Source of the DNA: Phaeosaccion multiseriatum
Lineage: Eukaryota; Protista; Ochrophyta, other classes
Assembly: GCA_965112735.1 (NCBI GenBank)
Contig: OZ218957.1
Location: 1,364,001 to 1,428,000, forward strand
Direction: 5' to 3'
Length of the DNA stretch: 64,000 nt
The position numbers and the translations under genes were made by a program. Positions 1-54,714 of this stretch are shown piece after piece; within the stretch, counting starts at the first letter, position 1, and every line of letters begins with the position of its first letter. The notes beneath the pieces are model-generated. The model saw nothing but the letters and a program-made list of their open reading frames with translations. It was not told the DNA's origin and did no database searches.

Positions 1-941
1 CCTCCAAAGAACTATGGGCAGCTGATGGAGAAGGCCAGCACGTGGCTCAAGCCGGAGGGAAAGCTGTTTGTGCACATCTTTTCGCACAAGGACTTCCCGT
101 ACCACTTCGAGATCGATGACGGCTTCATGGGAAAGTACTTCTTCACGGGCGGAACAAGTGAGTACAGCAGTGAAGGAGTGAGTCGAGTGGTGGAGGGAGG
201 GAGTAGGCGACTGTGTATGCGTGCGTGTGTGTGTGCGTGAATGGGTCGGTTGGCTTGGTCAGTGAAGTGAGTGAGCGAAGTGAGGAGTGAGGGAGTGAGG
301 AATCCATTGAGCGAGACAGGAAGAGGGTGTGCGTGCCTTGCTCTTTCACCAAGGTGACCGGCGCTCTCATCTTATGCTGGTGCCCCCCCCCCATATAGCC
401 TGCTCACCCCCCCCCCTCCCTCCCTCCCTCCCTCCCTCCCTCCCTCCTTCCCTCCCTTCCTCCAGTGCCTTCGGACGACCTTCTGCTCTACTTCCAGGAC
501 CACTTCAAGATCCAGCGTCATTGGAGAGTCAACGGCACGCACTACTCCAAGACGTCGGAGGCTTGGCTAAAGCAGATGGATGACAACAAAGCAGAGGTGT
601 GTGTGTATGTGTGTGTGTGTGGCTAAAGCAGATGGACGACAACAAAGCAGATCTGTGTGCGTGTGCTATGTGTGAGACAAACGTCACGAGAAGGGAACGA
701 AGGTAGTCCAATAGCTCCTCCTCTGATATCTCCTCCCTCTCTCCCTCCCCGCCTCTCTCCCCCCCCGCCTCTCCCCCCCCCCAAGATTATGCCCATTCTG
801 ACAAAGATCTACGGAGAGGGAGAGGAGACCAAGTGGTTTGTTTACTGGAGGCTCTTTTACATCGCATGCGCGGAGCTGTTCGGCTTCGCGGGTGGCGAGG
901 AGTGGCTGGTGAGCCACTACCTCTTCCAAAAGGCGACATAG
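1..941 (+). CDS. SAM-dependent methyltransferase, cyclopropane-fatty-acyl-phospholipid synthase / (S)-coclaurine N-methyltransferase-like, 3' part. Exons <1-157, 466-596, 786-941
   Basis: Spliced translation reads ...WLKPEGKLFVHIFSHK...YFFTGGT|MPSDDLLLYFQDHF...WRVNGTHYSKTSEAWL...|...YWRLFYIACAELFGFAGGEEWLVSHYLF, typical family motifs. Introns 158-465 and 597-785 are GT..AG and keep the frame. Confidence 0.9.
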
Positions 942-36900: not shown

Positions 36901-37003
36901 CGTCCTGGTCGAGAGGATAGCACCCCTCCACACTCAAATGCAGCGCAGAGTCCTCGAGACTGCGGAAGGTATCGTTCGAGTCATGCATGCCTGCCCCGTA
37001 GGC

Positions 37004-37034
<31 letters not shown>

Positions 37035-40000
37035 GGGGTCCAAGAGTTGAAGTAGGTGGTGTCTCGCTCGACGGTGATGCTGATGGGCTCCACCACCGGA
37101 GAGACCAGCAGGAGGATGTCCGCCTGCACGAAGGACACGCTCTCCAGCGAGCACGCCGCATCGCTGGTGAATGCCACCAAACTCAAGTTGAAAGCCCCCG
37201 AGGAGTGCTCGGCAGCAAGCACAGTGAGGCTATCCGAGGTCGCATTGGCAGCAGCGATGGAGTATGCGACTTCATATCCACGAAGGGTGGTAGCGGCGGG
37301 TGTCAGCAGCACGCCGGCAGCACGTACTTCCTTCAATTCGTCGGTAAACGCCAGCAGCATCACGTCGAAGGTCTCCGAGTCGTCACTGTCCTCTCGTACC
37401 ATCAGCTCCACAAGGGGAAGCACCACCGCTTCATCCTCCAACCCCTCCACAGTCGCATTGGTGACAAGCGTGGGCTCCTCCGCCCAGGGCTTGACGCAGG
37501 TGCTAATGGTGTAGTAGCTGGAGACGTTGCGGCTTAGCCCGGTGGCAGGGTCGGTGTCGGTTACGGTGGCGAGAAGCTCGAACCACAACGGTCCGGCGTA
37601 GTCGCGCAGGCTTTGTAGAGTGAGGGTACCGTTTACTACCTCCGGCCAGGGGGCACCACCAAAGCCGACGCCATCGCCATCGGTGATATAATAATCGTGG
37701 ATGAGGAGATCGTATGCGTGTGCCGGCTCCTCCCCGTCGCTCAGAGCGAGGCCTGCGACACTCGCACCCTCAATGGAGGTGAGCGGGACACCGGCGAAGG
37801 AGACATTGTTGAACGTCTGTTGCATCGTGTCGTTATCCGAGGAGGTCAGGAGTGTCAGTGTCAGGACTTCATTGCCGGTGACTCCAACGGCGGAAGCAGA
37901 GGCGATGGTGACGTTGAAGGCGCTGTCTTCTGTAACGCCGGCGAGGGCGTAGGAGAGAAGCACCACAGGGGGGTCGGCGATGGGCTTGACATTCACAGTC
38001 AAGCTCTCCGAGACCGAGGCGTAGGAGGCCAATGGTGATGATGATGATGAAGCTGATGACGTGTCGAGGAGGAGGCTCGTTTCGGCGACAATGAGCTCGA
38101 CATCGAGGGTCAAGTCGCCGAAGAAGTTAGCCACGGGGCGGATCTGCAGCTCCACTGAGCCTGGGATGGTGTCCCTCGTCCAAACACTACTCGTGCTACT
38201 GCCGTTCATCACGTACACAAACCACTCGTCCCCTCCCTCTTCCTCCAATGAAGAGGATGAAGCCGCCTCCGGACCGAGGGCGCTAAAGACAGGGGCCGCG
38301 GTGGGCATGAAGGAGAAGGCTGGAGAAGGCGTGTCACCGAGAGACGAGTTAGACGACGACGACGACGACGACGACGAAGACGAGGAGGAGGACAGTGAGG
38401 TAGTCACGGTCGCCGTGACGTTGGTGGCGGTGCCCGACACCAGGTACTCTCCGTTGAGCGTCACGGAGGCGAGCTGCACAGAAGAGTACAGCTCGAGGAA
38501 GGCAACCTCCGACCCGTCTGAGTCCGACAGAGCGAGCCCCGACAGGGTCATGTTGATGGTCTGGTCCTCCACGCCCACCTCCACCAGTGCCTTATCCAAA
38601 GTCATGGTTGGCGCATCCGGAACAGCCGTTACTGTAACTGTCGTCTCCATGCTGGTTTCCGCGCTGGCGTTGAGGCGACTCACGAGTGAGTCGGATAGTG
38701 CGCTGTAGTCCTCCGTAGCGAGAGCCACTACTTGCACTTGGAAGGAGCCGCTGTAGTGCGTGGCAGGAAGCAGGCTGAGCACCACATCCTCTCCTGCCTC
38801 GGTCAGTGCCACGGCCTCGGAGGGAAGCTCGTAGACATCATAGTAGTACACGTCGCCGTCGCCAACGCTGACAGCGAGCCTGGAGGAGGAGGCGTTGAGG
38901 GCAGCTCCATCGTAGAAGATTCCTCCCAGGGCATCTGCATCTGCATCCGCAAGGCCGTCCGAGTCACTAGCAGCAGCAGCAGAAGCAGCCTGTACGCGCA
39001 CCTCCAAGGAGAGGGTTTCCGAGCCTTCGTCATTGTCCATGAGGGCAGCAAGTGTGACCGTCAGCTCCACCGCCTCGTCCTCCTTCGTCTGCAGGGAAGT
39101 GGACTGGAGGTCCAGGCTTGGTTGCTGCGGGGCCGAGGGTATCTCCAATGTGATGACACTGGACAGCTCGGCAGTGGAATTGAGTCGGCAAGCCGGGCAC
39201 ACGAGGGAAGGCGGGTCGAGTGCGTGCTCCGTGGACACGGCGACGAGAGTAACGTCCATGCGGGAGGGCGCCTTGACGCTGACGTTACCCGAGGCGGCGC
39301 TGCCCAAGGCGTAGACGTAGAGGGTTTCCACGCCGTTTCGCATCTCCGTTGGAGAGAGCAGAACAGAGGAGGACGACGACGAGGACGAGGAGGAGGAGGA
39401 GGAGAGCTCCTGTCGCACTTGAGTGGCGTTGCTGGTCATTCGAAGCTGCATCGACACGTCTTCGGAGCCATCCTTGTCGCTTGCCTGCATACCCTTCCAA
39501 CCCAAGGTGAGCCAATCGATGGACAGACCCGCCACCGTGCTCCCCGCCGCCGGACTCAGCACGAGGGTCTCCGGGTCGGGAACATCCGCCACGGGGGTTA
39601 CGAGGAAGCTCCAGTCGCTGGAGGTGCTCATGGTGCCGTTGTGGGTGGAGAGATTGTAAGCCGTGGCCACAAGGCGGAGAGAGAGATCGCCACTATAGTC
39701 CTGCCCCGGGTGGGCGATGAGAGTGCCCGTGCCGCCACCGGAGCCCAGCAGGGAGGAGGGGGCCTCGTACACAAATGTTGTCCATTCCTCACTACTGCCG
39801 CTGCTCGTGCTGCTGCTGCTGCTGTTGGTGCTGGCTGTCGAAGAAGTCGAGGAAGCGGAGTAGTTGCGTGTGAGGGTGAAGGCCTCCCCGGTAGCGTTAT
39901 AGACGATAGAGGCGAGCTCTGCAGCAGTGGCATTCGTATGCACCTCTAGCCGGACCGTAGAGCCCCTCCCTGTCATTTCATCGTCAACATGTAACGACAA

Positions 40001-40299
40001 CTCCTCCACCATCAGCGCCGCTCCGTCTGGGTCGTCCTCGGAAACCCTCCAGTCCGCCTCTCCGAGTGTCAGGACCGGGGTGTCCAGTAGTGCTTGGAAG
40101 TGGAGCGTAACGGCGGTTTCTGTAACCGCCGAGGCGTTCCTCTGCCCCTCCCATAGACTGGAAGGGTACTCACTCCAGTCCTCGGTAGCAGTGGCCTCGA
40201 GCACGATGCCCAAGTCGCCGTAGTAGCCCTCGGTGGTGGCAAACGTCAAGGTCAAGCTGGTGGAGCTGCTCAACCCTCCCGCACTGCTACTACTACTGC

Positions 40300-40332
<33 letters not shown>

Positions 40333-41406
40333 CGAGGCTGTCAAGGCCGACGAGACTGCTCAGATTGTAAGTCCACCACTGACCGTTACCACCGCTGGAG
40401 GAGGAGAAGGCAGTCTGCGTCCCGTTGAGGAGCAGCACTTGCGCGTGGCCGTCATCGGAACCGTCGTCGGAGTGCGAAGATGAAACCGATATGGAAGTGA
40501 GATGTGCGTGGGAGGCATTGGCGATGCGCATCAACAGAGACAGACTCTCCTCACCCCCGTCCGTGTCGTTGAGTGCCACCGACTCAATCATCAGGGTGGC
40601 CTCCTTGTCCTCGAAGGTCGACACCACTTGGTCTCTGCTGACACCGCTGCCGAAGGTCAGGGTCGGTGGCTGGGGCTCCGGGAGGACAACGAGGGACACC
40701 ACAGTGGGGCGCTCGCTGATGGAGCTCCATGAGAAGGCAGCGCCTCCTCTTCCTGCCACGACTTCTTCCTCCGACACGGCAACGAGGGTTATAGTGGACG
40801 ACTGCGAAGCAACAACACTGATGCTTCCGGAGGATTCCAACGCGTCACTATTCCCCTCCTCAATCGCAAAGACAGTCATCTCATCGATATTGCCATCTGT
40901 GATTCCATCGTTGGATGATGATGTCGTGCCGTTGAGCGCCTTGCCCTGGAAGTAGATGCCGCGGACAAACCCCCCGCTACTGCTGCTGCTGTCCACTCTC
41001 GCCTCCAACCGAATGGCCTCAGAGCCGTCCGTATCCGCTGAAGACAGGCCTGACCAAGATACCACGGCCGCCTCGTTCTTGAGCGCGTACAGAGTAGTGG
41101 TGGAGGTAGACCAGGAGGAGGAGGAGGAGGAGGAGGAGAGAGATTCCGAGTCGACGTTCACGGTCATAAGCGGTGGATCTGCACGCGGTACCACAAAGAG
41201 GTCCCAAGCCACTGCGGTCTCCGCGGTACGAGACACCTGATTGCTGGCAAGACTCTCGTTGTACGCCACCGCAACGAGCGACATGGAGATGTTGCCACCG
41301 AAGTCCGCGATGGGGTAGACCGACAACTCGCCCCCGCCCGCTTGGAGGAGAGAGGCGGGTGCCGTGTATGTGTAGAGCGTGGTCACACTTGTACTCATGC
41401 TAGTCG

Positions 41407-41446
<40 letters not shown>

Positions 41447-44400
41447 GTTTGTGGCCGTGCTGGTGGTCGTACCGGAGCTGCTCACCGGATTGGACATGGC
41501 CACCGAGAAGGCCTCTCCATTGTACTCGATACGATCCACAGACTGTGCGCTCTCTTGCCACAGGCGCACCTCCAGGTTGAGCAGTTCGGATCCGTCGTCG
41601 TCGGACAATGAAACGTCGCCAATCTCACACACCGCCGGCATGGAGTCGTCCTCCATCACCCAGGAAGTGAGGGAGGTGACGTTGAGGGTAGGGGCATCAG
41701 CCACTCCCTTGACGTACATGACCCCTGTGTGGCTCCGAGAGGTGGAGTTGCCTCCATCCATCACGTGGGCAGTGGCAATGAGCTCAAAGTACAGCGTGCC
41801 CGCAAAGTGCGTCGCAGGGAGAATGCTGACTGTGCTGTTCTGGGCATGCCCTCCCAGCCAGCCCGGAAACCACAGCTCGTCCACCAAGGCGTACCGGGTG
41901 CCCGTGTTCCAGCTTTGGTTGCGATCCTCCCCCTCCCCAACCGGGCTGCTTGAGACAATCATTTGCCCATTAAACTCCACCGAGGTGACGTTGGAGGGCC
42001 CTAACCACAGCTCCAGTGAGAGGTACTCATCGCTGCCACTCGCACGGGCCTCCTCGATACCCACCACCACCGCCTCGTCCTCCTGCACCGTCAACCTCAA
42101 ACTGGGGATGATGAGCACTGGCGGTGAAGCTGCTGCCGCCTCCACCTGAACCAGCACCACCGCCACCCGCTCGGCCTCTGAAACCGCCGTACGTGTCTGC
42201 GCTTCATCCTCTTGTGCAAGACTCTCTGAGGTCCGTAGGATGACGGAGGCCGAGAACGAGCCGGGGGAGGCCGTCGTGAGCAGCAGTGTGCCGGAGGAGG
42301 GGAGACTCGAAGGAGTCCACACCAGTCCCTCCGCGAAGTAGTCACATTCACCACCAATATCATCATCCTCATTGTCGTCGTCGTCACCGTTGGCATTTGA
42401 GGCGGACGAAGCAGACGTGATCGACGAAGAGAACATGGAAGTGGCGGCCGAAGAAGAAGCGTTGAGCGAAGTCCCCGAGAAGGAGATGTCGGACACTGCC
42501 CCACACGTAATGCGCAGCACCAGTTGCATCTCCTCGGATCCATCGGTATCCTGGAAAGCCATTCCGCTCAACTCGAGCGTGATCCTCTCACCCTCCGAGC
42601 CATCCCAATGAGTCTCACTTAGCTCAAACAAGGCTGCGTCTGCTCTTGGTGCCACCACGAGCTCGACAAAGACCGAAGTAGAGGCCGTGGAGTCGTACCG
42701 CGCCTCTGAGGAAGTCGCCACCACATCCATATCGAGCACGCCGGACCAGTCGGGAGAGGCCAGCAACTCGATGCTGCCTTCGCCGGCCTCCACCAGACCT
42801 GAGGGCACCGCCACTGTCCACACATTGCTCTCTGCGTCCAGCGTGGCCCCACTGAGCAGATCCTCCCCATCGAACGTCAGCTGAGACACATACGCCATGG
42901 TGTCGTCAGACAGCCGCAGAGCCAGGCTCACGCTCTCGCGACCCCCGTCGGTATCATTTGCACGGACGGAGGTCACCACGATGTCAACTGTGCTGTCTTC
43001 CAGTCCCATCACTGTCGCTGTCTCCAGCTCCAGCACGGGCGCCTGGGCCGATGGAATCACGAAGGTAGACAGCGTCACTGCTCGCTCGGCTGAGCTGCCA
43101 CTTGACGCAAAGTCTACGCCGGCCTCATCCGCGACGGCCACCACACTCAGAGACGAGCTCTTGGTCATGGCCACCCCGAAGGAGCCACTCTCCTCCGTGC
43201 CCAGCATGTACGTCACGCCGGACCAGCTCCCGCTCTCCGTCAACATGCCCTCGAGCTCCACACCGCCCAGCCACACACCGCTCACACTACCATCGGAAGG
43301 CACGCGAAGCTCCATAGACGCGCTCTCCGTTCCGTAAGTGTCAAGAGCCGCCAAGCCGGACCAAGTTAGGTTCACACGTTGGTCCTTCTCTCCGATGACA
43401 GTGCTGTTCACCACCACTACGTCCACCCAAGGGGCGTCCGCCACAGGCACCACCAACACCTCCACAGACACCGAAGTAGAGGCCGTGGAGTCGTACCGCG
43501 CCTCTGAGGAAGTCGCCACCACGTCCATGTCGAGCACGCCGGACCAGTCGGGAGAGGCCAGCATCTCGATGCTGCCTTCGCCGGCCTCCACCAGACCTGA
43601 GGGCACCGCCACTGTCCACACATTGCTCTCTGCGTCCAGCGTGGCCCCACTGAGCAGATCCTCCCCATCGAACGTCAGCTGAGACACATACGCCATGGTG
43701 TCGTCAGACAGCTGCAGAGCCAGGCTCGCGCTCTCGCGACCCCCGTCGGTATCAATGACTGCCACCGCAGCCACGACGATGTCAACTGTGTTGTCTTCCA
43801 GTCCCATCACTGTCGCTGTCTCCAGCTCCAGCACGGGCGCCTGGGCCGATGGAATCACGAAGGTAGACAGCGTCACTGCTCGCTCGGCTGAGCTGCCACT
43901 TGACGCAAAGTCCACGCCGGCCTCATCCGCGACGGCCACCACACTCAGAGACGAGCTCTTGGTCATGGCCACCCCGAAGGAGCCGCTCTCCTCCGTGCCC
44001 AGCATGTACGTCACGCCGGCCCAGCTCCCGCTCTCCGTCAACGTGCCCTCGAGCTCCACACCACCCAGCCACACACCGCTCACACTACCATCGGAAGGCA
44101 CGCGAAGCTCCATAGACGCGCTCTCCGTTCCGTAAGTGTCAAGAACCGCCAAGCCGGACCAAGTTAGGTTCACACGTTGGTCCTTCTCTCCGATCACAGT
44201 GCTGTTCACCACCACGACGTCCACCCAAGGGGCGTCCGCCACAGGCACCACCAACACCTCCACAGACACCGAAGTGGAGGCCGTGGAGTCGTACCGCGCC
44301 TCTGAGGAAGTCGCCACCACATCCATGTCGAGCACGCCGGACCAGTCGGGAGAGGTCAGCATCTCGATGCTGCCTTCGCCGGCCTCCACCAGACCTGAGG

Positions 44401-47400
44401 GCACCGCCACTGTCCACACATTGCTCTCTGCGTCCAGCGTGGCCCCACTGAGCAGATCCTCCCCACCGAACGTCAGCTGAGACACATACGCCATGTTGTC
44501 GTCAGACAGCTCCAGAGCCAGGCTCACGCTCTCGCGACCCCCGTCGGTATCATTGACCGCCACCGCAGCCACGACGATGTCAACTGTGCTGTCTTCCAGT
44601 CCCATCACTGTCGCTGTCTCCAGCTCCAGCACGGGCGCCTGGGCCGATGGAATCACGAAGGTAGACAGCGTCACTGCTCGCTCGGCTGAGCTGCCACTTG
44701 ACGCAAAGTCTACGCCGGCCTCATCCGCGACGGCCACCACACTCAGAGACGAGCTCTTGGTCATGGCCACCCCGAAGGAGCCGCTCTCCTCCGTGCCCAG
44801 CATGTACGTCACGCCGGACCAGCTCCCGCTCTCCGTCAACGTGCCCTCGAGCTCCACACCGCCCAGCCACACACCGCTCACACTACCATCGGAAGGCACG
44901 CGAAGCTCCATAGACGCGGACTCCGACCCATACGCGTCCACCGCCGTGAGAGCGGACCAAGACACATTCACCCGTTGGTCCTTCTCTCCGATCACAGTGC
45001 TGTTCACCACCACTACGTCCACCCACGGGGCGTCCGCCACAGGCACCACCAACACCTCCACAGACACCGAAGTAGAGGCCGTGGAGTCGTACCGCGCCTC
45101 TGAGGAAGTCGCCACCACATCCATGTCGAGCACGCCGGACCAGTCGGGAGAGGCCAGCATCTCGATGCTGCCTTCGCCGGCCTCCACCAGACCTGAGGGC
45201 ACCGCCACTGTCCACACATTGCTGTCTGCGTCCAGCGTGGCCCCACTGAGCAGATCCTCCCCATCGAACGTCAGCTGAGACACATACGCCATGGTGTCGT
45301 CAGACAGCTCCAGAGCCAGGCTCACGCTCTCGCGACCCCCGTCGGTATCATTGACCGCCACCGCAGCCACGACGATGTCAACTGTGTTGTCTTCCAGTCC
45401 CATCACTGTCGCTGTCTCCAGCTCCAGCACGGGCGCCTGGGCCGATGGAATCACGAAGGTAGACAGCGTCACTGCTCGCTCGGCTGAGCTGCCACTTGAC
45501 GCAAAGTCTACGCCGGCCTCATCCGCGACGGCCACCACACTCAGAGACGAGCTCTTGGTCATGGCCACCCCGAAGGAGCCGCTCTCCTCCGTGCCCAGCA
45601 TGTACGTCACGCCGGACCAGCTCCCGCTCTGCGTCAACGTGCCCTCGAGCTCCACACCGCCCAGCCACACACCGCTCACACTACCATCGGAAGGCACGCG
45701 AAGCTCCATAGACGCGCTCTCCGTTCCGTAAGTGTCAAGAGCCGCCAAGCCGGACCAAGTTAGGTTCACACGTTGGTCCTTCTCTCCGATCACAGTGCTG
45801 TTCACCACCACTACGTCCACCCAAGGGGCGTCCGCCACAGGCACCACCAACACCTCCACAGACACCGAAGTAGAGGCCGTGGAGTCGTACCGCGCCTCTG
45901 AGGAAGTCGCCACCACATCCATGTCGAGCACGCCGGACCAGTCGGGAGAGGCCAGCATCTCGATGCTGCCTTCGCCGGCCTCCACCAGACCTGAGGGCAC
46001 CGCCACTGTCCACACATTGCTGTCTGCGTCCAGCGTGGCCCCACTGAGCAGATCCTCCCCATCGAACGTCAGCTGAGACACATACGCCATGGTGTCGTCA
46101 GACAGCTCCAGAGCCAGGCTCACGCTCTCGCGACCCCCGTCGGTATCATTGACCGCCACCGCAGCCACGACGATGTCAACTGTGTTGTCTTCCAGTCCCA
46201 TCACTGTCGCTGTCTCCAGCTCCAGCACGGGCGCCTGGGCCGATGGAATCACGAAGGTAGACAGCGTCACTGCTCGCTCGGCTGAGCTGCCACTTGACGC
46301 AAAGTCTACGCCGGCCTCATCCGCGACGGCCACCACACTCAGAGACGAGCTCTTGGTCATGGCCACCCCGAAGGAGCCGCTCTCCTCCGTGCCCAGCATG
46401 TACGTCACGCCGGACCAGCTCCCGCTCTGCGTCAACGTGCCCTCGAGCTCCACACCGCCCAGCCACACACCGCTCACACTACCATCGGAAGGCACGCGAA
46501 GCTCCATAGACGCGCTCTCCGTTCCGTAAGTGTCAAGAGCCGCCAAGCCGGACCAAGTTAGGTTCACACGTTGGTCCTTCTCTCCGATCACAGTGCTGTT
46601 CACCACCACTACGTCCACCCAAGGGGCGTCCGCCACAGGCACCACCAACACCTCCACAGACACCGAAGTAGAGGCCGTGGAGTCGTACCGCGCCTCTGAG
46701 GAAGTCGCCACCACATCCATGTCGAGCACGCCGGACCAGTCGGGAGAGGCCAGCATCTCGATGCTGCCTTCGCCGGCCTCCACCAGACCTGAGGGCACCG
46801 CCACTGTCCACACATTGCTCTCTGCGTCCAGCGTGGCCCCACTGAGCAGATCCTCCCCATCGAACGTCAGCTCAGACACATACGCCATGGTGTCGTCAGA
46901 CAGCTCCAGAGCCAGGCTCACGCTCTCGCGACCCCCGTCGGTATCATTGACCGCCACCGCAGCCACGACGATGTCAACTGTGTTGTCTTCCAGTCCCATC
47001 ACTGTCGCTGTCTCCAGCTCCAGCACGGGCGCCTGGGCCGATGGAATCACGAAGGTAGACAGCGTCACTGCTCGCTCGGCTGAGCTGCCACTTGACGCAA
47101 AGTCTACGCCGGCCTCATCCGCGACGGCCACCACACTCAGAGACGAGCTCTTGGTCATGGCCACCCCGAAGGAGCCGCTCTCCTCCGTGCCCAGCATGTA
47201 CGTCACGCCGGACCAGCTCCCGCTCTCCGTCAACGTGCCCTCGAGCTCCACACCGCCCAGCCACACACCGCTCACACTACCATCGGAAGGCACGCGAAGC
47301 TCCATAGACGCGGACTCCGACCCATACGCATCCACCGCCGTGAGGGCGGACCAAGACACATTCACCCGTTGGTCCTTCTCTCCGATGACAGTGCTGTTCA

Positions 47401-50400
47401 CCACCACTACGTCCACCCAAGGGGCGTCCGCCACAGGCACCACCAACACCTCCACAGACACCGAAGTGGAGGCCGTGGAGTCGTACCGCGCCTCTGAGGA
47501 AGTCGCCACCACATCCATGTCGAGCACGCCGGACCAGTCGGGAGAGGCCAGCATCTCGATGCTGCCTTCGCCGGCCACCACCAGACCTGAGGGCACCGCC
47601 ACTGTCCACACATTGCTGTCTGCGTCCTGCATGGCCCCACTGAGCAGATCCTCCCCATCGAACGTCAGCTGAGACACATACGCCATGGTGTCGTCAGACA
47701 GCTGCAGAGCCAGGCTCACGCTCTCGCGACCCCCGTCGGTATCATTTGCACGGACGGAGGTCACCACGATGTCAACTGTATTGTCTTCCATTCCCATCAC
47801 TGTCGCTGTCTCCAGCTCCAGCACGGGCGCCTGGGCCGATGGAATCACGAAGGTAGACAGCGTCACTGCTCGCTCGGCTGAGCTGCCACTTGACGCAAAG
47901 TCTACGCCGGCCTCATCCGCGACGGCCACCACACTCAGAGACGAGCTCTTGGTCATGGCCACCCCGAAGGAGCCGCTCTCCTCCGTGCCCAGCATGTACG
48001 TCACGCCGGACCAGCTCCCGCTCTCCGTCAACGTGCCCTCGAGCTCCACACCGCCCAGCCACACACCGCTCACACTACCATCGGAAGGCACGCGAAGCTC
48101 CATAGACGCGGACTCCGACCCATACGCGTCCACCGCCGTGAGAGCGGACCAAGACACATTCACCCGTTGGTCCTTCTCTCCGATCACAGTGCTGTTCACC
48201 ACCACTACGTCCACCCACGGGGCGTCCGCCACAGGCACCACCAACACCTCCACAGACACCGAAGTAGAGGCCGTGGAGTCGTACCGCGCCTCTGAGGAAG
48301 TCGCCACCACATCCATGTCGAGCACGCCGGACCAGTCGGGAGAGGCCAGCATCTCGATGCTGCCTTCGCCGGCCTCCACCAGACCTGAGGGCACCGCCAC
48401 TGTCCACACATTGCTGTCTGCGTCCAGCGTGGCCCCACTGAGCAGATCCTCCCCATCGAACGTCAGCTGAGACACATACGCCATGGTGTCGTCAGACAGC
48501 TCCAGAGCCAGGCTCACGCTCTCGCGACCCCCGTCGGTATCATTGACCGCCACCGCAGCCACGACGATGTCAACGGTGTTGTCTTCCATTCCCATCACTG
48601 TCGCTGTCTCCAGCTCCAGCACGGGCGCCTGGGCCGATGGAATCACGAAGGTAGACAGCGTCACTGCTCGCTCGGCTGAGCTGCCACTTGACGCAAAGTC
48701 TACGCCGGCCTCATCCGCGACGGCCACCACACTCAGAGACGAGCTCTTGGTCATGGCCACCCCGAAGGAGCCGCTCTCCTCCGTGCCCAGCATGTACGTC
48801 ACGCCGGACCAGCTCCCGCTCTCCGTCAACGTGCCCTCGAGCTCCACACCGCCCAGCCACACACCGCTCACACTACCATCGGAAGGCACGCGAAGCTCCA
48901 TAGACGCGGACTCCGACCCATACGCATCCACCGCCGTGAGGGCGGACCAAGACACATTCACCCGTTGGTCCTTCTCTCCGATGACAGTGCTGTTCACCAC
49001 CACTACGTCCACCCAAGGGGCGTCCGCCACAGGCACCACCAACACCTCCACAGACACCGAAGTGGAGGCCGTGGAGTCGTACCGCGCCTCTGAGGAAGTC
49101 GCCACCACATCAAAGCCGAGCACGCCGGACCAGTCGGGAGAGGCCAGCATCTCGATGCTGCCTTCGCCGGCCTCCACCAGACCTGAGGGCACCGCCACTG
49201 TCCACACATTGCTGTCTGCGTCCTGCATGGCCCCACTGAGCAGATCCTCCCCATCGAACGTCAGCTGAGACACATACGCCATGGTGTCGTCAGACAGCTG
49301 CAGAGCCAGGCTCACGCTCTCGCGACCCCCGTCGGTATCATTTGCACGGACGGAGGTCACCACGATGTCAACTGTATTGTCTTCCATTCCCATCACTGTC
49401 GCTGTCTCCAGCTCCAGCACGGGCGCCTGGGCCGATGGAATCACGAAGGTAGACAGCGTCACTGCTCGCTCGGCTGAGCTGCCACTTGACGCAAAGTCTA
49501 CGCCGGCCTCATCCGCGACGGCCACCACACTCAGAGACGAGCTCTTGGTCATGGCCACCCCGAAGGAGCCGCTCTCCTCCGTGCCCAGCATGTACGTCAC
49601 GCCGGACCAGCTCCCGCTCTCCGTCAACGTGCCCTCGAGCTCCACACCGCCCAGCCACACACCGCTCACACTACCATCGGAAGGCACGCGAAGCTCCATA
49701 GACGCGGACTCCGACCCATATGCGTCCACCGCCGTGAGGGCGGACCAAGACACATTCACCCGTTGGTCCTTCTCTCCGATCACAGTGCTGTTCACCACCA
49801 CTACGTCCACCCAAGGGGCGTCCGCCACAGGCACCACCAACACCTCCACAGACACCGAAGTGGAGGCCGTGGAGTCGTACCGCGCCTCTGAGGAAGTCGC
49901 CACCACATCCATGTCGAGCACGCCGGACCAGTCGGGAGAGGCCAGCATCTCGATGCTGCCTTCGCCGGCCTCCACCAGACCTGAGGGCACCGCCACTGTC
50001 CACACATTGCTGTCTGCGTCCTGCATGGCCCCACTGAGCAGATCCTCCCCATCGAACGTCAGCTCAGACACATACGCCATGGTGTCGTCAGACAGCTCCA
50101 GAGCCAGGCTCACGCTCTCGCGACCCCCGTCGGTATCATTGACTGCCACCGCAGCCACGACGATGTCAACGGTATTGTCTTCCAGTCCCATCACTGTCGC
50201 TGTCTCCAGCTCCAGCACGGGCGCCTGGGCCGATGGAATCACGAAGGTAGACAGCGTCACTGCTCGCTCGGCTGAGCTGCCACTTGACGCAAAGTCTACG
50301 CCGGCCTCATCCGCGACGGCCACCACACTCAGAGACGAGCTCTTGGTCATGGCCACCCCGAAGGAGCCGCTCTCCTCCGTGCCCAGCATGTACGTCACGC

Positions 50401-52942
50401 CGGACCAGCTCCCGCTCTCCGTCAACGTGCCCTCGAGCTCCACACCGCCCAGCCACACACCGCTCACACTACCATCGGAAGGCACGCGAAGCTCCATAGA
50501 CGCGGACTCCGACCCATATGCGTCCACCGCCGTGAGGGCGGACCAAGACACATTCACCCGTTGGTCCTTCTCTCCGATGACAGTGCTGTTCACCACCACT
50601 ACGTCCACCCAAGGGGCGTCCGCCACAGGCACCACCAACACCTCCACAGACACCGAAGTGGAGGCCGTGGAGTCGTACCGCGCCTCTGAGGAAGTCGCCA
50701 CCACATCCATGTCGAGCACGCCGGACCAGTCGGGAGAGGCCAGCATCTCGATGCTGCCTTCGCCGGCCTCCACCAGACCTGAGGGCACCGCCACTGTCCA
50801 CACATTGCTGTCTGCGTCCTGCATGGCCCCACTGAGCAGATCCTCCCCATCGAACGTCAGCTGAGACACATACGCCATGGTGTCGTCAGACAGCTGCAGA
50901 GCCAGGCTCACGCTCTCGCGACCCCCGTCGGTATCATTTGCACGGACGGAGGTCACCACGATGTCAACTGTATTGTCTTCCATTCCCATCACTGTCGCTG
51001 TCTCCAGCTCCAGCACGGGCGCCTGGGCCGATGGAATCACGAAGGTAGACAGCGTCACTGCTCGCTCGGCTGAGCTGCCACTTGACGCAAAGTCTACGCC
51101 GGCCTCATCCGCGACGGCCACCACACTCAGAGACGAGCTCTTGGTCATGGCCACCCCGAAGGAGCCGCTCTCCTCCGTGCCCAGCATGTACGTCACGCCG
51201 GACCAGCTCCCGCTCTCCGTCAACGTGCCCTCGAGCTCCACACCGCCCAGCCACACACCGCTCACACTACCATCGGAAGGCACGCGAAGCTCCATAGACG
51301 CGGACTCCGACCCATATGCGTCCACCGCCGTGAGGGCGGACCAAGACACATTCACCCGTTGGTCCTTCTCTCCGATCACAGTGCTGTTCACCACCACTAC
51401 GTCCACCCAAGGGGCGTCCGCCACAGGCACCACCAACACCTCCACAGACACCGAAGTGGAGGCCGTGGAGTCGTACCGCGCCTCTGAGGAAGTCGCCACC
51501 ACATCCATGTCGAGCACGCCGGACCAGTCGGGAGAGGCCAGCATCTCGATGCTGCCTTCGCCGGCCTCCACCAGACCTGAGGGCACCGCCACTGTCCACA
51601 CATTGCTCTCTGCGTCCAGCGTGGCCCCACTGAGCAGATCCTCCCCATCGAACGTCAGCTGAGACACATACGCCATGGTGTCGTCAGACAGCTGCAGAGC
51701 CAGGCTCACGCTCTCGCGACCCCCGTCGGTATCATTGACTGCCACCGCAGCCACGACGATGTCAACGGTATTGTCTTCCAGTCCCATCACTGTCGCTGTC
51801 TCCAGCTCCAGCACGGGCGCCTGGGCCGATGGAATCACGAAGGTAGACAGCGTCACTGCTCGCTCGGCTGAGCTGCCACTTGACGCAAAGTCTACGCCGG
51901 CCTCATCCGCGACGGCCACCACACTCAGAGACGAGCTCTTGGTCATGGCCACCCCGAAGGAGCCGCTCTCCTCCGTGCCCAGCATGTACGTCACGCCGGA
52001 CCAGCTCCCGCTCTCCGTCAACGTGCCCTCGAGCTCCACACCGCCCAGCCACACACCGCTCACACTACCATCGGAAGGCACGCGAAGCTCCATAGACGCG
52101 GACTCCGACCCATATGCGTCCACCGCCGTGAGGGCGGACCAAGACACATTCACACGTTGGTCCTTCTCTCCGATCACAGTGCTGTTCACCACCATGACGT
52201 CCACCCAAGGGGCGTCCGCCACAGGCACCACCACCACCTCCACAGACACCGAAGTAGAGGCCGTGGAGTCGTACCGCGCCTCTGAGGAAGTCGCCACCAC
52301 ATCAAAGCCGAGCACGCCGGACCAGTCCGGAGAGGCCGTCACCTCGATGCTGCCTTCGCCGGCCTCCACCAGACCTGAGGGCACCGCCACTGTCCACACA
52401 TTGCTTTCTGCGTCCAGCGTGGTCCCACTGAGCAGATCCTCCCCATCGAACGTCAGCTGAGACACATACGCCATGGTGTCGTCAGACAGCTGCAGAGCCA
52501 GGCTCACGCTCTCGCGACCGTTGTCGGTATCGTTTGCACGGACGGAAGTCACGACCATCTCCACCACTCCATCCTCCAGTCCAAGTGGTTGAATGGTCTC
52601 CAGCTCCAGCACCGGTGCCTGGGCACTTGGTTTGACGAAGGTCGAGAGCACGATTGCTCTCTCTGCCGTCGAAGAGGTGGACACACAGTCCACTGCTGTC
52701 AACAAGATTGAAACGAACCCCCGCACCAAGAACCAAGAACAAACAAACGTTTGATGTCAATGTTAAGAATAATAGCATGATTTGGGGACGCTCTCCTCCC
52801 GGATGCCCCCCCCCCCCCACTCCGAGTGGAGAGACACTGGAGAGACAATGTCGTGGGAGAGAATGGAGAGGCACTCACCTCGATGGCTCCATGCCCCGAG
52901 CCAGACGAGGGCGAGCCGACTGAGGTTGGCGAGGCCCTTCAT
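24991..52942 (-). CDS. Giant polycystin-1/REJ-like surface receptor or adhesin, 8,598 aa. Exons 52942-52879, 52695-34179, 34044-33732, 33204-32699, 32433-32164, 31872-31446, 31297-30896, 30706-28684, 28265-24991
   Basis: Nine GT-AG exons sum to 25,797 nt with every splice phase matching. Order: signal peptide MKGLANLSRLALVWLGAWSHRAVDC; Ig/cadherin-like repeats (PVADAP, ED, D-x-DGSE); Calx-beta-like domains; PKD/REJ segments (LTLDGGSS...FTWS, LDLDGSSSYDPD...YVWSC, APTSGSLSLTPTTGTSLDTSFTF...WVDD); GPS CSWFN...WSDEGC...VTCSCTHLTDF; PKD1-type EH...S...FTRPQR and 5 TM helices; cytoplasmic zinc-finger array. Confidence 0.92.
25150..25340 (-). repeat. Coding minisatellite encoding GAASVSAS(EAV) repeats in the C-terminal tail of the giant protein
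   Basis: Repeated cactggccgcccctaccgcctcactggcactca units. Confidence 0.8.
26116..27622 (-). other. Array of 18 TRAF-type (C-x1-4-C...H-x3-7-C) zinc fingers, followed by a UBA-like helix bundle (~25940-26040)
   Basis: Counted from CSLGC...HEEEEC to CQC...HLRGC, linked by CP-x-R-x-V-x-C spacers. IGQVMSARACSPAVALCALGESGGNASSA resembles a UBA-like motif; this part of the call is weaker. Confidence 0.85.
28112..30050 (-). other. Polycystin-1-type five-TM membrane domain, with no PLAT domain and no 6-TM channel half
   Basis: TM1 LTVVTTLLALYGLFVLGCVWG; LKQEHRIISVY...FTRPQR then TM2; TM3 LYMAVMATILATPIALVLVLLF; cytoplasmic coiled coil; TM4 AVYVVGLSYAAMCAYYVLAFSVF; Cys-rich loop; TM5 WLGTLILTFFIAFVVTQPLMLLL. 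Confidence 0.8.
30130..30245 (-). other. GPS autoproteolysis motif (C-terminal end of the GAIN domain), HL/T site intact
   Basis: PTCSWFNATSLTWSDEGCTVANYTTNSVTCSCTHL|TDF. Confidence 0.92.
34860..35970 (-). other. Three Calx-beta/Ig-like domains
   Basis: Repeated E-x-G...V-x-L...P...V...P-x-x-L-x-F-x-x-x-x-W/Y...SSD-x-x-Y/F...V-x-V-DDD pattern. Confidence 0.65.
35970..42640 (-). other. About 13 diverged Ig/cadherin-like domains with poly-Ser insertions
   Basis: Recurring domain boundaries (PRADAA, VADAP, PRADPP, EPQPP, LLDTP, PVADVP, VPDAP, PIADPP, PWAEEP, PVVEP) followed by ED and D-x-DGSE motifs. Confidence 0.75.
42640..52690 (-). repeat. Coding tandem array of 12.5 units of 798 bp (266 aa). 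Each unit is two Ig/cadherin-like domains, A and B (13 A, 12 B)
   Basis: Near-identical segments recur at exact 798-bp spacing (43102, 43900, 44698 ... 51880) with few substitutions and no introns. Confidence 0.97.
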
Positions 52943-53232
52943 CCCAGGGCCTATTCGACCTCTACGCGGACCAGACCCCTGCAGGGATCAGAGCAGATGG
53001 CATTGCTTTAATTGTTTTTGCCTGCCTGCGTTATGCGCGCAAGATCCGCGGCTAGGCTACCGGACAGGATTTTCCGTTACCTCTGAATTTCGAGTTTCAG
53101 CCCGGCTGGGTGAAACTGTTGCTTCAAACGACTTCCTCAAACGGACTGGGGTGGCTCCGCACCCACTCCCTTTTGGCTTTCGACTCTTCAAACAAATAGT
53201 ATTAAGGGAACTACTGCGCGGCGAAGAGAATT
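52943..53232. promoter_or_regulatory. Putative bidirectional promoter (290 bp between ATGs) shared by the giant gene and the single-repeat gene
   Basis: Divergent ATGs at 52942 (-) and 53233 (+). No specific promoter element identified. Confidence 0.55.
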
Positions 53233-54714
53233 ATGAAGGGTATTAATGCGTGGCGCGCACTCATCTTTGCCGGTATGCAGTGGAGCCGAGCCGGTAAGTC
53301 GCTCTTGCTTCCGCGCAACATCATTTTCCTTCTTCATGGAGGTCATAACTGTCGCCCGATTCCAGACGACGCTCACCCTCACCACCCAAGAAAAGGCAGC
53401 CCCCCTAACCACCGTGTGCGATGCGCTTGACCTGCTGTCTCCCGCTTTTTGGACTTGCTTGGTGCTCGAGCAGGAGCAGACACACTCGACTTCGTGACTA
53501 CCTCTTCGACGGCAGAGAGAGCGATCGTGCTCGATACCTATGTATTCCCAAGTGCTCAGGTATGTTTCATGCACACACATCCGCCCGCAAACACTTGCTG
53601 GGCCACTCTAAATGAGAGTTCTCTCTGGTTTCTCTCCCAACCCCTCCCTCTGGCAGCCACCTGTGCTGGAGCTGGAGACAGCAATAGTGATGGGACTGGA
53701 AGACGACACGATAGACATCAGGGTGATTAATGTCCATGCAAACGATACCGACGAAGGACGCGAGAGCGTGAGCCTCGCCGTGCATCTATCTGACGACACC
53801 ATGGCGTACGTGTCTCAGCTCATGTACGATGGGGAGGACCTGCTGGGCGATAATGCCGTGATGGACTCTGAGACCGACGAATGGACAGTGTCAATACCCT
53901 CAAATATTGTGGACGAGGAAGAGGGCACTATCCAGGTGGTGGCCTCACCGGACTGGTCCGGCGTGCTGAGCATGGATCTAGTGGCCACTTCCTCAGAGGC
54001 ACGGTACGACTCGACGGCATCTACTACGGTATCTGTGGAGCTCGTGGTGGCGCCTGTGGCTGACGCTCCTTGGGTTGACGTCATGGTGGTGAACAGCACT
54101 GTGATCGGAGAGAAGGACCAACGTGTGAATGTAACCTGGTTCGACCTTCGTTCGGTTGACTCGGACGGATCGGAGAGCGCGTCTGTGGAGGTGCGTGTGT
54201 GCAAGGGAGGGGGGGTGGCAGTGGATGGGCGGGGGGGGAGTATGGGAGGGGAGGAGCGGACAGACGGATGGAGGGAGAGGGGGATACTCTTAGGCTTTGG
54301 AAGGAGCTTTACTCGCCAGGAGTAGGGAGGGATGAGAAAGTGTGTAGTAGGGGAGTGGGGGGGGGAAGGGCAATAGCTCTCACCACTGACACTCTCTACC
54401 ACTCCTGACATTCAGACGCTACTGATTAGACGACTGCACTACCGCTACCGACTGACACACTCAGCACACGCCCCCCCCCCCTCCCCCCCCCCCTCCTCCT
54501 CCAACAGCTTCGTGTGCCCGACGACGGCAGTGTGAGCGGTGTGTGGCTGGGCGGTGTGGAGCTCGAGGGCACGTTGACGGAGGGCGGGAGCTGGTCCGGC
54601 GTGACGTACATGCTGGGCACGGAGGAGAGCGGCTCCTTCGGGGTGGCCATGACCAAGAGCTCGTCTCTCAGTGTGGTGGCCGTCGCCGAGGAGGCATCAG
54701 CAAGCTTTGCTTAG
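53233..54714 (+). CDS. Secreted single-unit paralogue of the giant protein's 266-aa repeat, 295 aa, circularly permuted. Exons 53233-53293, 53474-53559 (alternative acceptor 53480), 53657-54190, 54508-54714
   Basis: Four GT-AG exons total 888 nt in frame: MKGINAWRALIFAGMQWSRA|GADTLDFVTTSSTAERAIVLDTYVFPSAQ|PPVLELE...VAPVADAPWVDV...SESASVE|LRVPDDGSV...SSLSVVAVAEEASASFA*. Homology to the repeat resumes exactly at each splice junction. Confidence 0.88.

What the first reader, a model, noticed from the sequence alone, without database searches (positions are those of the whole stretch)
42640..54714. Candidate eukaryotic donor-strand-complemented filament: a secreted, circularly permuted Ig subunit encoded head-to-head with its giant polycystin-like anchor
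Seen in sequence: each 266-aa repeat of the giant protein is two Ig/cadherin-like domains, each ending in a strand plus P-x-A-x-AP linker. Domain A ends ...STSVSVEVLVVP|VADAP and domain B ends ...SSAERAVTLSTFVIP|SAQAP. The divergent + strand gene encodes a signal peptide, then B's last strand (TSSTAERAIVLDTYVFP), then all of domain A, then domain B, stopping at ...SSLSVVAVAEEASASFA* just before that last strand. The mature giant protein also begins with an orphan copy of that strand (TSSTAERAIVLSTFVKP). The two free strands are identical over 11 residues (TSSTAERAIVL) and differ from the internal copies (SGSSAERAVTL). Established knowledge: an N-terminal extension that completes the neighbour's incomplete Ig fold is how chaperone-usher pili polymerise, and TasA-like and archaeal bundling filaments also use donor-strand exchange. 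Inference: domain A lies between the strand and its groove, so the subunit should not self-complement. It could dock on the anchor's tip strand and polymerise head-to-tail, extending the covalent 12.5-unit stalk into an open-ended fibre rooted in a REJ-GPS-5TM receptor. I know of no described eukaryotic system with this layout; the PKD2-anchored Ig-containing mastigonemes of Chlamydomonas are a loose analogy.
Basis: partly seen in the sequence, partly recalled or inferred. Interest (0 to 1): 0.96.

Follow-up and report, generated by a model that had tools for sequence, protein, structure and literature searches.

The report
Split cadherin-like domain shared by neighbour genes
Next to a giant algal surface-receptor gene lies a small, evolutionarily maintained gene whose protein carries a spare beta-strand at its front and lacks that same strand at its back, so copies could click together and onto the giant's tip, although neither expression nor assembly has been shown.

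Summary
The minus strand carries a gene with a signal-peptide exon and a 6211-codon exon: 13 A and 12 B domains at an exact 266-residue period, then REJ, GPS, membrane helices and TRAF fingers. A 4-exon, 295-aa gene lies 290 bp away, head to head. It encodes a signal peptide, a copy of domain B's last strand, all of A, then B ending 4 residues before that strand.

AlphaFold2 and fold searches show tandem cadherin/Ig-like sandwiches, each ending in strand plus P-x-A-x-AP. The spare strand is not folded back in cis, and B loses confidence without its last strand.

The small gene is not a dead copy. All splice sites are intact. Its domain A keeps the family-profile score that random replacement destroys (0 of 300 simulations).

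The polymer idea survives every test I could run but has no direct support. No RNA data, no orthologues and no multimer model were available. The layout can also arise passively from an in-register inverted duplication. The identity of the two free strands fits common descent and patchy gene conversion.

Trans strand complementation, as cap or fibre, is the best single reading (about 0.4). ZP-module filaments are a eukaryotic precedent for the principle. This pair was not found before on other DNA.

The parts
52879..52942 (-). Giant gene exon 1: MKGLANLSRLALVWLGAWSHR, signal-peptide-like, phase-1 donor GTGAGT
   Evidence: 8-residue hydropathy maximum 2.24
52628..52678 (-). Spare (orphan) copy of domain B's last strand at the giant's mature N-terminus: TSSTAERAIVLSTFVKP
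   Evidence: Coil with pLDDT 47-67 in the AlphaFold2 model
42632..52615 (-). Array of 13 A and 12 B cadherin-like domains with a 266-residue (798-nt) period and no introns
35981..42628 (-). About 14 older, diverged domains of the same family, each ending strand + P-x-A-D-x-P, with serine-rich insertions
31431..33204 (-). Exons matching the REJ domain
   Evidence: E 1.4e-17, 4.6e-15, 8.7e-09
28223..30697 (-). GPS motif (CTHL/TDF) followed by at least three hydrophobic membrane segments
24994..28635 (-). Cytoplasmic TRAF-type zinc-finger array
   Evidence: zf-TRAF 108 bits, 7 stretches
52943..53232 (.). 290-bp spacer between the two start codons; presumed shared divergent promoter (inference)
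   Evidence: no residual inverted homology here
53233..53293 (+). Small gene exon 1: MKGINAWRALIFAGMQWSRA, signal-peptide-like, phase-1 donor GTAAGT, in-frame TAG 12 codons upstream
   Evidence: hydropathy maximum only 1.59
53474..53559 (+). Small gene exon 2, carrying the spare strand TSSTAERAIVLDTYVFP (53500-53550); alternative acceptor at 53480
53657..54190 (+). Small gene exon 3: complete domain A (53657-54070) and the first 40 residues of domain B (54071-54190)
54508..54714 (+). Small gene exon 4: the rest of domain B up to strand F and 8 tail residues, then TAG at 54712. B's last strand is absent and homology to the array ends here
54506..54695 (+). Tract 94.7% identical to the array units, against 78% for exon 3: recent gene conversion from the array
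54077..54130 (+). 18 codons nucleotide-identical to the giant's unit 1, including the unit-1-specific Met: a second short conversion tract

Best explanation
Shown: the small gene is an old, selectively maintained, head-to-head partial paralogue of the giant gene's 5' end. It covers the signal-peptide exon plus one repeat period, in the same register as the giant's second exon. Its product would be signal peptide, spare G strand, complete cadherin-like domain A, then domain B without its G strand. The giant's mature N-terminus carries the same spare strand and has no incomplete domain.

Inferred: both proteins enter the secretory pathway, probably from a shared 290-bp divergent promoter. B cannot finish its sandwich on its own. 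The spare strand of the same chain sits at the far pole of A, so it cannot reach B in an extended two-domain rod. B is therefore completed in trans by the spare strand of the giant or of another small subunit. Each such joint would reproduce the array's normal B-to-A junction with a nick in the long F-G loop. The result would be a cap, or an open-ended chain, of small subunits prolonging the covalent 12.5-unit stalk of a REJ-GPS membrane receptor. New subunits would add at the distal end, which always shows a free strand. No chaperone is implied, so the mechanism would resemble the chaperone-free strand-donation filaments.
For: Gene structure and register.

Fold and domain limits:
- AlphaFold2 mean pLDDT 90.5. 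A's G strand is model residues 143-156 and B's is 274-287, each followed by the linker.
- Three-domain matches to cadherin-23 EC13-15 (model 27..421) and protocadherin-1 (Z 10.8).
- Single-domain matches cover model residues about 22-157.
- About 40 in-register domain copies.

No cis rescue, and a weakened B, in the strand-A-B-minus-G proxy. Two-domain hits align over 19..270, so the model is an extended rod.

A real, selected gene:
- Three GT..AG introns excise in frame.
- The signal exon is homologous to the giant's, although intron 1 and the promoter have lost all similarity.
- dN/dS is 0.32-0.42 at dS 0.4-0.5.
- The only indel in the coding alignment is one in-frame codon.
- Domain A scores 81.9 bits against an independent family profile, against 82.4 and 88.2 for the giant's units. 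Simulated copies with 19 or 38 random replacements score 65.7 +/- 7.1 and 44.7 +/- 9.5, and 0 of 300 reach 81.9.
- The small B keeps a canonical D-S-D-G-S-E motif.

Other points:
- Three N-x-S/T sequons, no cysteine and a very acidic composition fit an extracellular cadherin-like protein.
- The four inward-facing positions of the strand (I, L, T, V) are kept in both free copies, while the three differences lie at outward positions. This is weak (about P 0.25).
- No second copy of the strand and no + strand exon lie downstream.
Against: - Nothing directly shows transcription, secretion, binding or polymers. No RNA run was listed, and the four runs that hold the locus are DNA.
- No orthologue or related small gene was found, so conservation of the layout is untested.
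- The predictions used a proxy from the giant (77% identical), were monomers, and gave no coordinates. Contacts were not inspected, and a drop in pLDDT does not measure stability.
- The layout has a passive origin: an inverted duplicate that starts where exon 2 starts and ends one period later.
- A random end point falls in the 13-residue F-G loop about 5% of the time, and more often if an intron once lay there.
- Patchy gene conversion can explain the identity of the free strands and part of the low dN/dS in B.
- The groove-side half of the small B is essentially the array's own sequence, so there is no sign of co-adaptation with the free strands.
- The small gene's signal peptide is weak by hydropathy.
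- A subunit with both a groove and a donor strand should polymerise inside the ER. No control step is evident.
Confidence: 0.4

Rival explanations
1. A functional secreted two-domain paralogue with no strand exchange. The gene is real and selected for domain A, for example as a soluble competitor or ligand of the giant's partners. The truncated B is a floppy or partly folded tail. The N-terminal strand is an inherited, disordered leftover of the repeat register.
For: - The selection signal is demonstrated only for domain A.
- Similarity in B is largely due to conversion.
- The spare strands are predicted as coil.
- The layout follows automatically from the register of exon 2.
- The second half of the strand differs between the two free copies: DTYVFP against STFVKP.
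Against: - An Ig-like sandwich without its G strand exposes a hydrophobic groove, which ER quality control normally retains (established knowledge from pilins).
- The small B keeps family-consensus features at least as well as the giant's B: 44.3 against 42.1 bits, with a canonical DSDGSE motif.
- A matching strand is present on the same protein and on the divergently encoded neighbour.
Confidence: 0.33
2. A decaying or silent partial duplicate. The inverted copy is no longer expressed, or never was, and its open frame is kept looking healthy by occasional gene conversion from the array.
For: - No RNA evidence.
- Conversion tracts exist.
- Pairwise dN/dS of 0.33-0.49 does not by itself exclude neutrality on one branch.
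- A stop-free frame has P 0.03-0.16 under neutral change.
Against: - Exon 3 is only 78% identical to the array, so most of it has not been recently converted. It still has no stop or frameshift.
- Its replacements avoid family-conserved positions: 0 of 300 neutral simulations reach the observed score.
- The 97-nt and 317-nt interruptions absent from the array have exact GT..AG ends, polypyrimidine tracts and in-frame excision, which only makes sense if they are spliced.
- The signal exon keeps ATG, a hydrophobic core and a phase-1 donor, although the neighbouring non-coding DNA is unalignable.
Confidence: 0.1
3. Gene-model error. The true transcript differs, for example through an unseen 3' exon that supplies a last strand or a membrane anchor, or a different 5' exon without a signal peptide. 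The protein would then be neither permuted nor secreted as described.
For: - The model rests on sequence alone, with no transcript data.
- The downstream + strand ORF 54866-55438 contains hydrophobic stretches.
Against: - No usable donor lies upstream of TAG 54712.
- No second AER..L strand is encoded anywhere else in the window.
- The next recognisable ORFs lie on the minus strand.
- Exon 1 and its phase match the giant's exon 1.
Confidence: 0.1

Closest known systems
Chaperone-usher pilus subunits (donor-strand complementation and exchange)
   Same: An Ig-like sandwich lacks its seventh (G) strand. An N-terminal extension with alternating hydrophobic residues could fill the groove of the next, more distal subunit. 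A closed dimer is geometrically excluded, so the product would be an open chain.
   Different: This is a eukaryote, with no periplasmic chaperone or usher. A complete extra domain sits between donor strand and groove. The donor is a literal copy of the missing strand. The base is a membrane receptor that donates a strand but has no groove, and growth would be distal. There is no sequence relationship.
Chaperone-free strand-donation filaments: TasA (PMC9674648), archaeal bundling pili (PMC9245690), threads (PMC9715654)
   Same: A secreted subunit self-assembles by donating an N-terminal strand to the neighbouring subunit.
   Different: These are prokaryotic, with different folds and single-domain subunits. 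None is rooted on a covalent array of the same domains.
ZP-module filaments such as uromodulin (PMC7486124, PMC7737619)
   Same: A eukaryotic extracellular polymer is held together by enchained beta-sheet complementation of incomplete Ig-like subdomains. In uromodulin a donated strand pairs antiparallel with strand F.
   Different: The donor is the ZPN-ZPC linker, not an N-terminal strand. Assembly is licensed by proteolytic removal of a blocking strand. No ZP module is detected here.
Chlamydomonas mastigoneme: MST1 polymer tethered by MST3/PKD2/SIP (PMC11015965, PMC7265326)
   Same: An extracellular fibre rich in Ig-like domains is rooted in a polycystin-type membrane protein. The authors liken it to PKD1.
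   Different: MST1 assembles through cysteine-rich domains and polyproline helices, not by strand donation. The anchor there is PKD2-like, and the proteins are unrelated to these.
Bacterial cadherin-like adhesin repeats (tandem-95 repeat proteins, Pfam Cadherin_5 and Big_9, T1SS/RTX adhesins)
   Same: The domain pattern is shared: E-D...D-x-D-G-S-E...S-G...V-x-V-x-V-x-P-V-x-D-A-P. The profile search retrieves them. P0001 scores 212 bits with tandem-95. The fold matches AFDB RTX, tandem-95 and cadherin entries.
   Different: The window's own domains stay below every curated threshold. The domains here are longer, 130-136 residues against about 95.
REJ-GPS receptors (polycystin-1 / sea-urchin REJ family; Ectocarpus Esi0130_0068, PMC4700764)
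   Same: REJ domain, GPS site and several membrane helices. In Ectocarpus such a gene is expressed in male gametes.
   Different: No PLAT or polycystin channel domain is detected. The tail is a TRAF zinc-finger array, and the ectodomain is a 40-domain cadherin-like stalk.

Membership tests
Chaperone-usher type donor-strand system | Subunit with an Ig-like fold that lacks the C-terminal G strand | tested here: met
   By homology and by AlphaFold2 on the giant's units, B's G strand is model residues 274-287. The small gene stops 4 residues before it.
Chaperone-usher type donor-strand system | N-terminal extension able to supply that strand | tested here: met
   TSSTAERAIVLDTYVFP follows the signal-like peptide and keeps the four inward-facing residues of the internal strand.
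Chaperone-usher type donor-strand system | Dedicated periplasmic chaperone and outer-membrane usher | tested here: not met
   The genes are eukaryotic and spliced, and no such genes lie in the window. It is not a member; at most it works like one.
Chaperone-usher type donor-strand system | Strand actually inserted in trans, giving a stable polymer | not testable with these tools
   Only monomer predictions without coordinates were available.
Cadherin-like beta-sandwich repeats (Cadherin_5 / Big_9 / tandem-95) | Curated HMM match above threshold | tested here: not met
   Pfam gives no hit for the units. The NCBIfam tandem-95 match scores 14.2 bits against a cutoff of 90. The relative P0041 reaches Cadherin_5 at 27.3 bits overall against a 26.5 cutoff, but no single stretch passes on its own.
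Cadherin-like beta-sandwich repeats (Cadherin_5 / Big_9 / tandem-95) | Tandem seven-strand sandwiches with the last strand followed by a short acidic or proline linker | tested here: met
Polycystin-1 / REJ family | REJ domain plus GPS site upstream of the first membrane helix | tested here: met
   REJ E 1.4e-17, and GPS 30.2 bits against a cutoff of 22.5. CTHL/TDF precedes the first hydrophobic segment.
Polycystin-1 / REJ family | PLAT domain and polycystin-type channel-like membrane region (11 TM) | tested here: not met
   Pfam gives no PLAT or PKD_channel hit. Only three hydrophobic segments pass the threshold, with one more seen by eye below it.
ZP-module polymers | ZP-N/ZP-C module | tested here: not met
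   No Pfam hit in either gene.

The most novel reading that the evidence does not exclude
A eukaryotic, chaperone-free donor-strand fibre. Secreted strand-A-B(minus G) subunits add head to tail onto the free N-terminal strand of a REJ-GPS receptor. They would extend its covalent 25-domain cadherin-like stalk into an open-ended, non-covalently 'nicked' filament. The filament's length would be set by subunit supply from a shared divergent promoter.
Probability: 0.22. Interest if true: 0.9.

Novelty: new variant of a known kind. Interest (0 to 1): 0.62.

Why it matters
Strand donation is the main way bacteria and archaea build thin, very stable surface fibres. In eukaryotes only the ZP module is known to use a related trick.

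A cadherin-like domain split between two neighbouring genes would be a second, independent eukaryotic case. The subunit and its membrane anchor would be encoded side by side. It would show how a covalent repeat array can turn into a self-assembling polymer simply through the register of a duplication.

It would also give a handle on giant REJ-GPS surface receptors of ochrophyte algae, whose relatives in brown algae are candidate gamete-recognition proteins. Even the conservative reading has value: it is a clean example of a selected partial paralogue with patchy gene conversion against a homogenised array.

Tried and rejected
- RNA evidence: the first run search returned only four runs that hold introns and spacer at even depth, so they are DNA.
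- Relatives of the small gene: the word-indexed protein search with exon 3 found nothing. The metagenome contig scan found nothing. The profile search with A6 returned one uninformative 814-aa protein.
- Eukaryote-like relatives P0028, P0084 and P0041 lie on contigs of 1-2.3 kb with no context. Their 'N-termini' are internal fragments. Mapping P0028 onto its contig was too messy to place introns.
- Orthologue hunt with the non-repeat end of the big exon: the six hits have no domain of this family and look like bacterial Calx-beta/PA14 proteins. They were also too long for the contig look-up.
- Sequence searches for a named family: Pfam, NCBIfam and PDB sequence searches gave only noise for the units.
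- Rejected: taking the 11-residue identity of the free strands as a sign of co-adaptation. One synonymous difference in 11 codons is not unusual at dS of about 0.4, and conversion tracts are demonstrable.
- Rejected: a closed reciprocal dimer. In an extended rod the donor strand and the groove sit at opposite ends (inference).
- Model coordinates are not exposed to scripts, so strand contacts could not be measured.
Full report
WHAT IS THERE

The minus strand carries one very long open frame, 34094..52729 (6211 codons). It has no ATG of its own. A 64-nt exon at 52879-52942 (MKGLANLSRLALVWLGAWSHR, donor GTGAGT, phase 1) joins in frame to tandem acceptors at about 52695/52692.

The mature protein then begins with a few residues and TSSTAERAIVLSTFVKP-SAQAP, followed by the array. 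SAQAP recurs 13 times exactly 266 residues apart and VADAP 12 times in register, with a 13th A domain ending VVAPRADAA. That makes 13 A and 12 B domains at 42632-52615.

An iterated profile shows that A and B are homologous to each other and to about 14 older, serine-interrupted domains further on (residues 3368-5583). Every domain ends in a strand plus P-x-A-D-x-P. The N-terminal TSSTAER... segment aligns to the last 30 or so positions of the domain profile.

Downstream exons match REJ (E down to 1.4e-17), a GPS motif (30.2 bits; the site reads CTHL/TDF) and TRAF zinc fingers. No PLAT or channel domain was found.

THE SMALL GENE

It lies 290 bp from the giant's ATG, on the other strand. It has four exons:
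- 53233-53293: MKGINAWRALIFAGMQWSRA, donor GTAAGT, phase 1, with an in-frame TAG 12 codons upstream.
- 53474 or 53480 to 53559: ...LDFVTTSSTAERAIVLDTYVFPSAQ.
- 53657-54190: all of A and 40 residues of B.
- 54508-54714: the rest of B to ...SSLSVVAVAEEASASFA, then TAG.

All three introns are GT..AG with pyrimidine tracts, and they excise in frame. The internal repeats read ...VVAVADEAGVDFA-SSGSSAERAVTLSTFVIP, so the small protein stops four residues before B's last strand. DNA homology to the array fades within a few bases of the stop codon, with no trace of the strand afterwards.

No other copy of the strand is encoded in the window. The next recognisable ORFs lie on the minus strand. Contigs from four DNA runs of one sample cover 52500-54113, 54100-54481 and 54639-55500 without differences, so the arrangement is not an assembly artefact.

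FOLD AND DOMAIN LIMITS

Pfam, NCBIfam and PDB sequence searches give nothing significant for the units. A profile of eight domain copies finds 467 representative proteins. They include bacterial tandem-95 and RTX-type adhesins and several eukaryote-like fragments.

I used these as an alignment for AlphaFold2 on giant residues 13-440 (spare strand, A1, B1, A2). The model has mean pLDDT 90.5:
- A1 spans model residues 28-160, with last strands at 126-138 and 143-156.
- B1 spans 163-290, with strand F at 255-264, a long lower-confidence loop, and strand G at 274-287, which is SSAERAVTLSTFVI.
- A2 spans 294-422.
- The spare N-terminal strand is coil, with pLDDT 47-67.

Foldseek and VIA-align match the whole model to three-domain cadherin stretches: cadherin-23 EC13-15 over model 27..421, and protocadherin-1 at Z 10.8. 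They also match titin and a bacterial ice-binding adhesin. Single-domain hits to the second model cover about 22-157. That range includes A's own last strand and excludes the spare strand.

DOES THE SPARE STRAND FOLD BACK, AND DOES B NEED IT?

The spliced small protein has no single reference, so I folded the contiguous equivalent from the giant, residues 13-282. This is spare strand, A1 and B1 cut exactly where the small protein ends, and it is 77% identical to the small protein.

Residues 1-27 again show no beta ladder. Domain A is unchanged at about 95 pLDDT. The truncated B drops from a mean of about 89 to about 77, with a trough of 53. It loses the strand at 172-176 and most of 224-239.

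Two-domain structural hits align over 19..270, so the model is an extended rod. In such a rod the spare strand hangs from the pole of A that is farthest from B. Cis insertion or a closed reciprocal dimer would need a U-turn at the short PVADAP linker.

These results go in the direction the hypothesis requires. They are still only monomer predictions on a proxy.

IS THE SMALL GENE ALIVE?

- Identity to the array is 78% in exons 2 and 3 and 94.7% in exon 4. The promoter, most of exon 1 and intron 1 have lost all similarity apart from ATGAAGGG. The duplication is therefore old, and only coding parts were kept.
- Pairwise dN/dS is 0.32-0.42 at dS 0.4-0.5. This alone does not exclude neutrality on one branch. 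A stop-free frame has P 0.16-0.03 under 74-148 random substitutions.
- The stronger test uses a family profile built only from the diverged domains and foreign homologues. The small gene's A domain scores 81.9 bits, against 82.4 and 88.2 for the giant's units, despite 38-43 replacements. Simulated copies with 19 or 38 random replacements score 65.7 +/- 7.1 and 44.7 +/- 9.5, and none of 300 reaches 81.9.
- The small B scores 44.3 bits against 42.1, and keeps a canonical DSDGSE where the array has DAYGSE.
- The only indel in the coding alignment is one in-frame codon.
- The two interruptions absent from the array behave as true introns.

I conclude that this is, or very recently was, a spliced and translated gene under selection for its fold.

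WHAT WEAKENS THE ADAPTIVE STORY

The codon-by-codon comparison shows a mosaic:
- Exon 4 is almost the array's sequence.
- Eighteen codons at 54077-54130 are nucleotide-identical to unit 1, including its private Met.
- The strand core is 32/33 nt identical to the giant's free strand.
- The segments in between are heavily replaced.

Short gene conversions between the two inverted neighbours are the simplest explanation. They account for the '11 identical residues' without co-adaptation. One synonymous difference in 11 codons is not unusual at this dS.

The three differences between the two free strands all fall at outward-facing positions, and the inward I, L, T, V are kept. With three changes this has a chance probability of about 0.25.

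The permuted layout also has a passive origin. The copy begins where the giant's exon 2 begins (VDCVS and LDFVT align to the loop residues VDFAS) and ends one period plus about four residues later. An in-register duplication, or a breakpoint in a former loop intron, would produce it. A random end point falls in the 13-residue loop about 5% of the time.

WHAT COULD NOT BE TESTED

- Transcription: none was listed.
- Secretion: the small gene's hydrophobic core is short, with a hydropathy maximum of 1.59 against 2.24 for the giant.
- Multimer structure.
- Conservation. This genome's proteins are not in the protein libraries. Relatives sit on 1-2 kb contigs. Searches for orthologues of either gene failed.

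Earlier scan notes call the organism an unidentified ochrophyte alga related to brown seaweeds. I did not check this.

MECHANISM AND ODDS

The gene is real and its domains are kept foldable. A cadherin/Ig-like sandwich without its seventh strand should expose a groove between strands A' and F, as pilins do (established knowledge). The only matching strands are the two free copies, and cis use is geometrically unlikely.

The most economical reading is therefore trans complementation. The giant's free strand, or another subunit's, completes the small protein's B. This recreates the array's normal junction with a nick in the F-G loop. Once that works, nothing but concentration stops further subunits from adding distally, so 'cap' and 'fibre' are one mechanism.

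My odds:
- Trans complementation, cap or fibre: about 0.4 (about 0.22 for a true open-ended fibre).
- A functional paralogue without strand exchange: about 0.33.
- A silent or decaying copy: about 0.1.
- A wrong gene model: about 0.1.

COMPARISON WITH KNOWN SYSTEMS

It would work like chaperone-usher pilins, but it is not a member. There is no chaperone or usher, it is eukaryotic, and an extra complete domain sits between donor and groove. In being chaperone-free it is closer to TasA and the archaeal bundling pili and threads (PMC9674648, PMC9245690, PMC9715654).

The principle is not new to eukaryotes. Uromodulin and other ZP-module filaments are held by enchained beta-sheet complementation of Ig-like subdomains, which the authors describe as reminiscent of donor strand complementation (PMC7486124).

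The Chlamydomonas mastigoneme is a polymer rich in Ig-like domains, tethered by a PKD2-like protein. It assembles by other means (PMC11015965).

REJ-GPS receptors are known in brown algae as male-gamete genes (PMC4700764).

The domain family itself is a long form of the bacterial cadherin-like adhesin repeat.

VERDICT

If true, this is a new variant of a known kind of system. It merits a multimer prediction and one RNA-seq data set before anything else.

Noticed in passing
window 54506-54695, 54077-54130 and 53500-53532 against the array at 51900-52678: The similarity between the small gene and the giant is a mosaic. Near-identical tracts (94.7%, 54/54 nt and 32/33 nt) alternate with segments at about 70% identity. 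This points to repeated short gene conversions between inverted neighbours about 0.8-2.5 kb apart.
   Followed up: partly
window 52689-52698 (-) and 53472-53480 (+): Both genes have tandem in-frame acceptors at intron 1 (CAG|CAG in the giant, CAG GAG CAG in the small gene). Either choice keeps the frame, so the mature N-terminus just before the spare strand could vary by 1-2 residues.
   Followed up: no
window 53560-53656 and 54191-54507: The small gene has two introns inside the repeat unit that none of the 12.5 array units has. One lies exactly between the strand (PSAQ) and domain A. Either the array spread from an intron-less unit or the small gene gained them. Intron 3 holds long poly-G/poly-C runs.
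   Followed up: partly
window 28223-30697 (-): The GPS motif reads CSCTHL/TDFG, the classic autoproteolysis site. The roughly 7000-residue stalk may therefore itself be held on the membrane part only by a non-covalently bound beta-strand. An (EGRK)n low-complexity run follows the last hydrophobic segment.
   Followed up: no
window 54071-54190 (+) against array B domains: The small gene's B has the family-consensus D-S-D-G-S-E loop. All array B domains have D-A-Y-G-S-E or D-T-Y-G-T-E, so the small copy looks more ancestral at this presumed Ca-binding site.
   Followed up: no
window 34097-35980 (-): The end of the big exon, after the cadherin-like domains, contains three repeats of a ...VTV...DD pattern. 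In the word search these pulled out bacterial Calx-beta/PA14 giants (P0152-P0157). They are probably Calx-beta-like domains in front of the REJ module.
   Followed up: partly
window 55557-55835: An (AG)n microsatellite and a 124-bp tandem duplicate lie just downstream of the small gene. The minus-strand ORF here is low-complexity (SLSLPLSL...).
   Followed up: no
window 55956-56528 (-): This ORF has a poly-Gly run and a C-terminal cysteine pattern (CQACG...CKGC...CPNYCGRECQ) that resembles a MYND-type zinc finger. It is the next gene after the small one.
   Followed up: no
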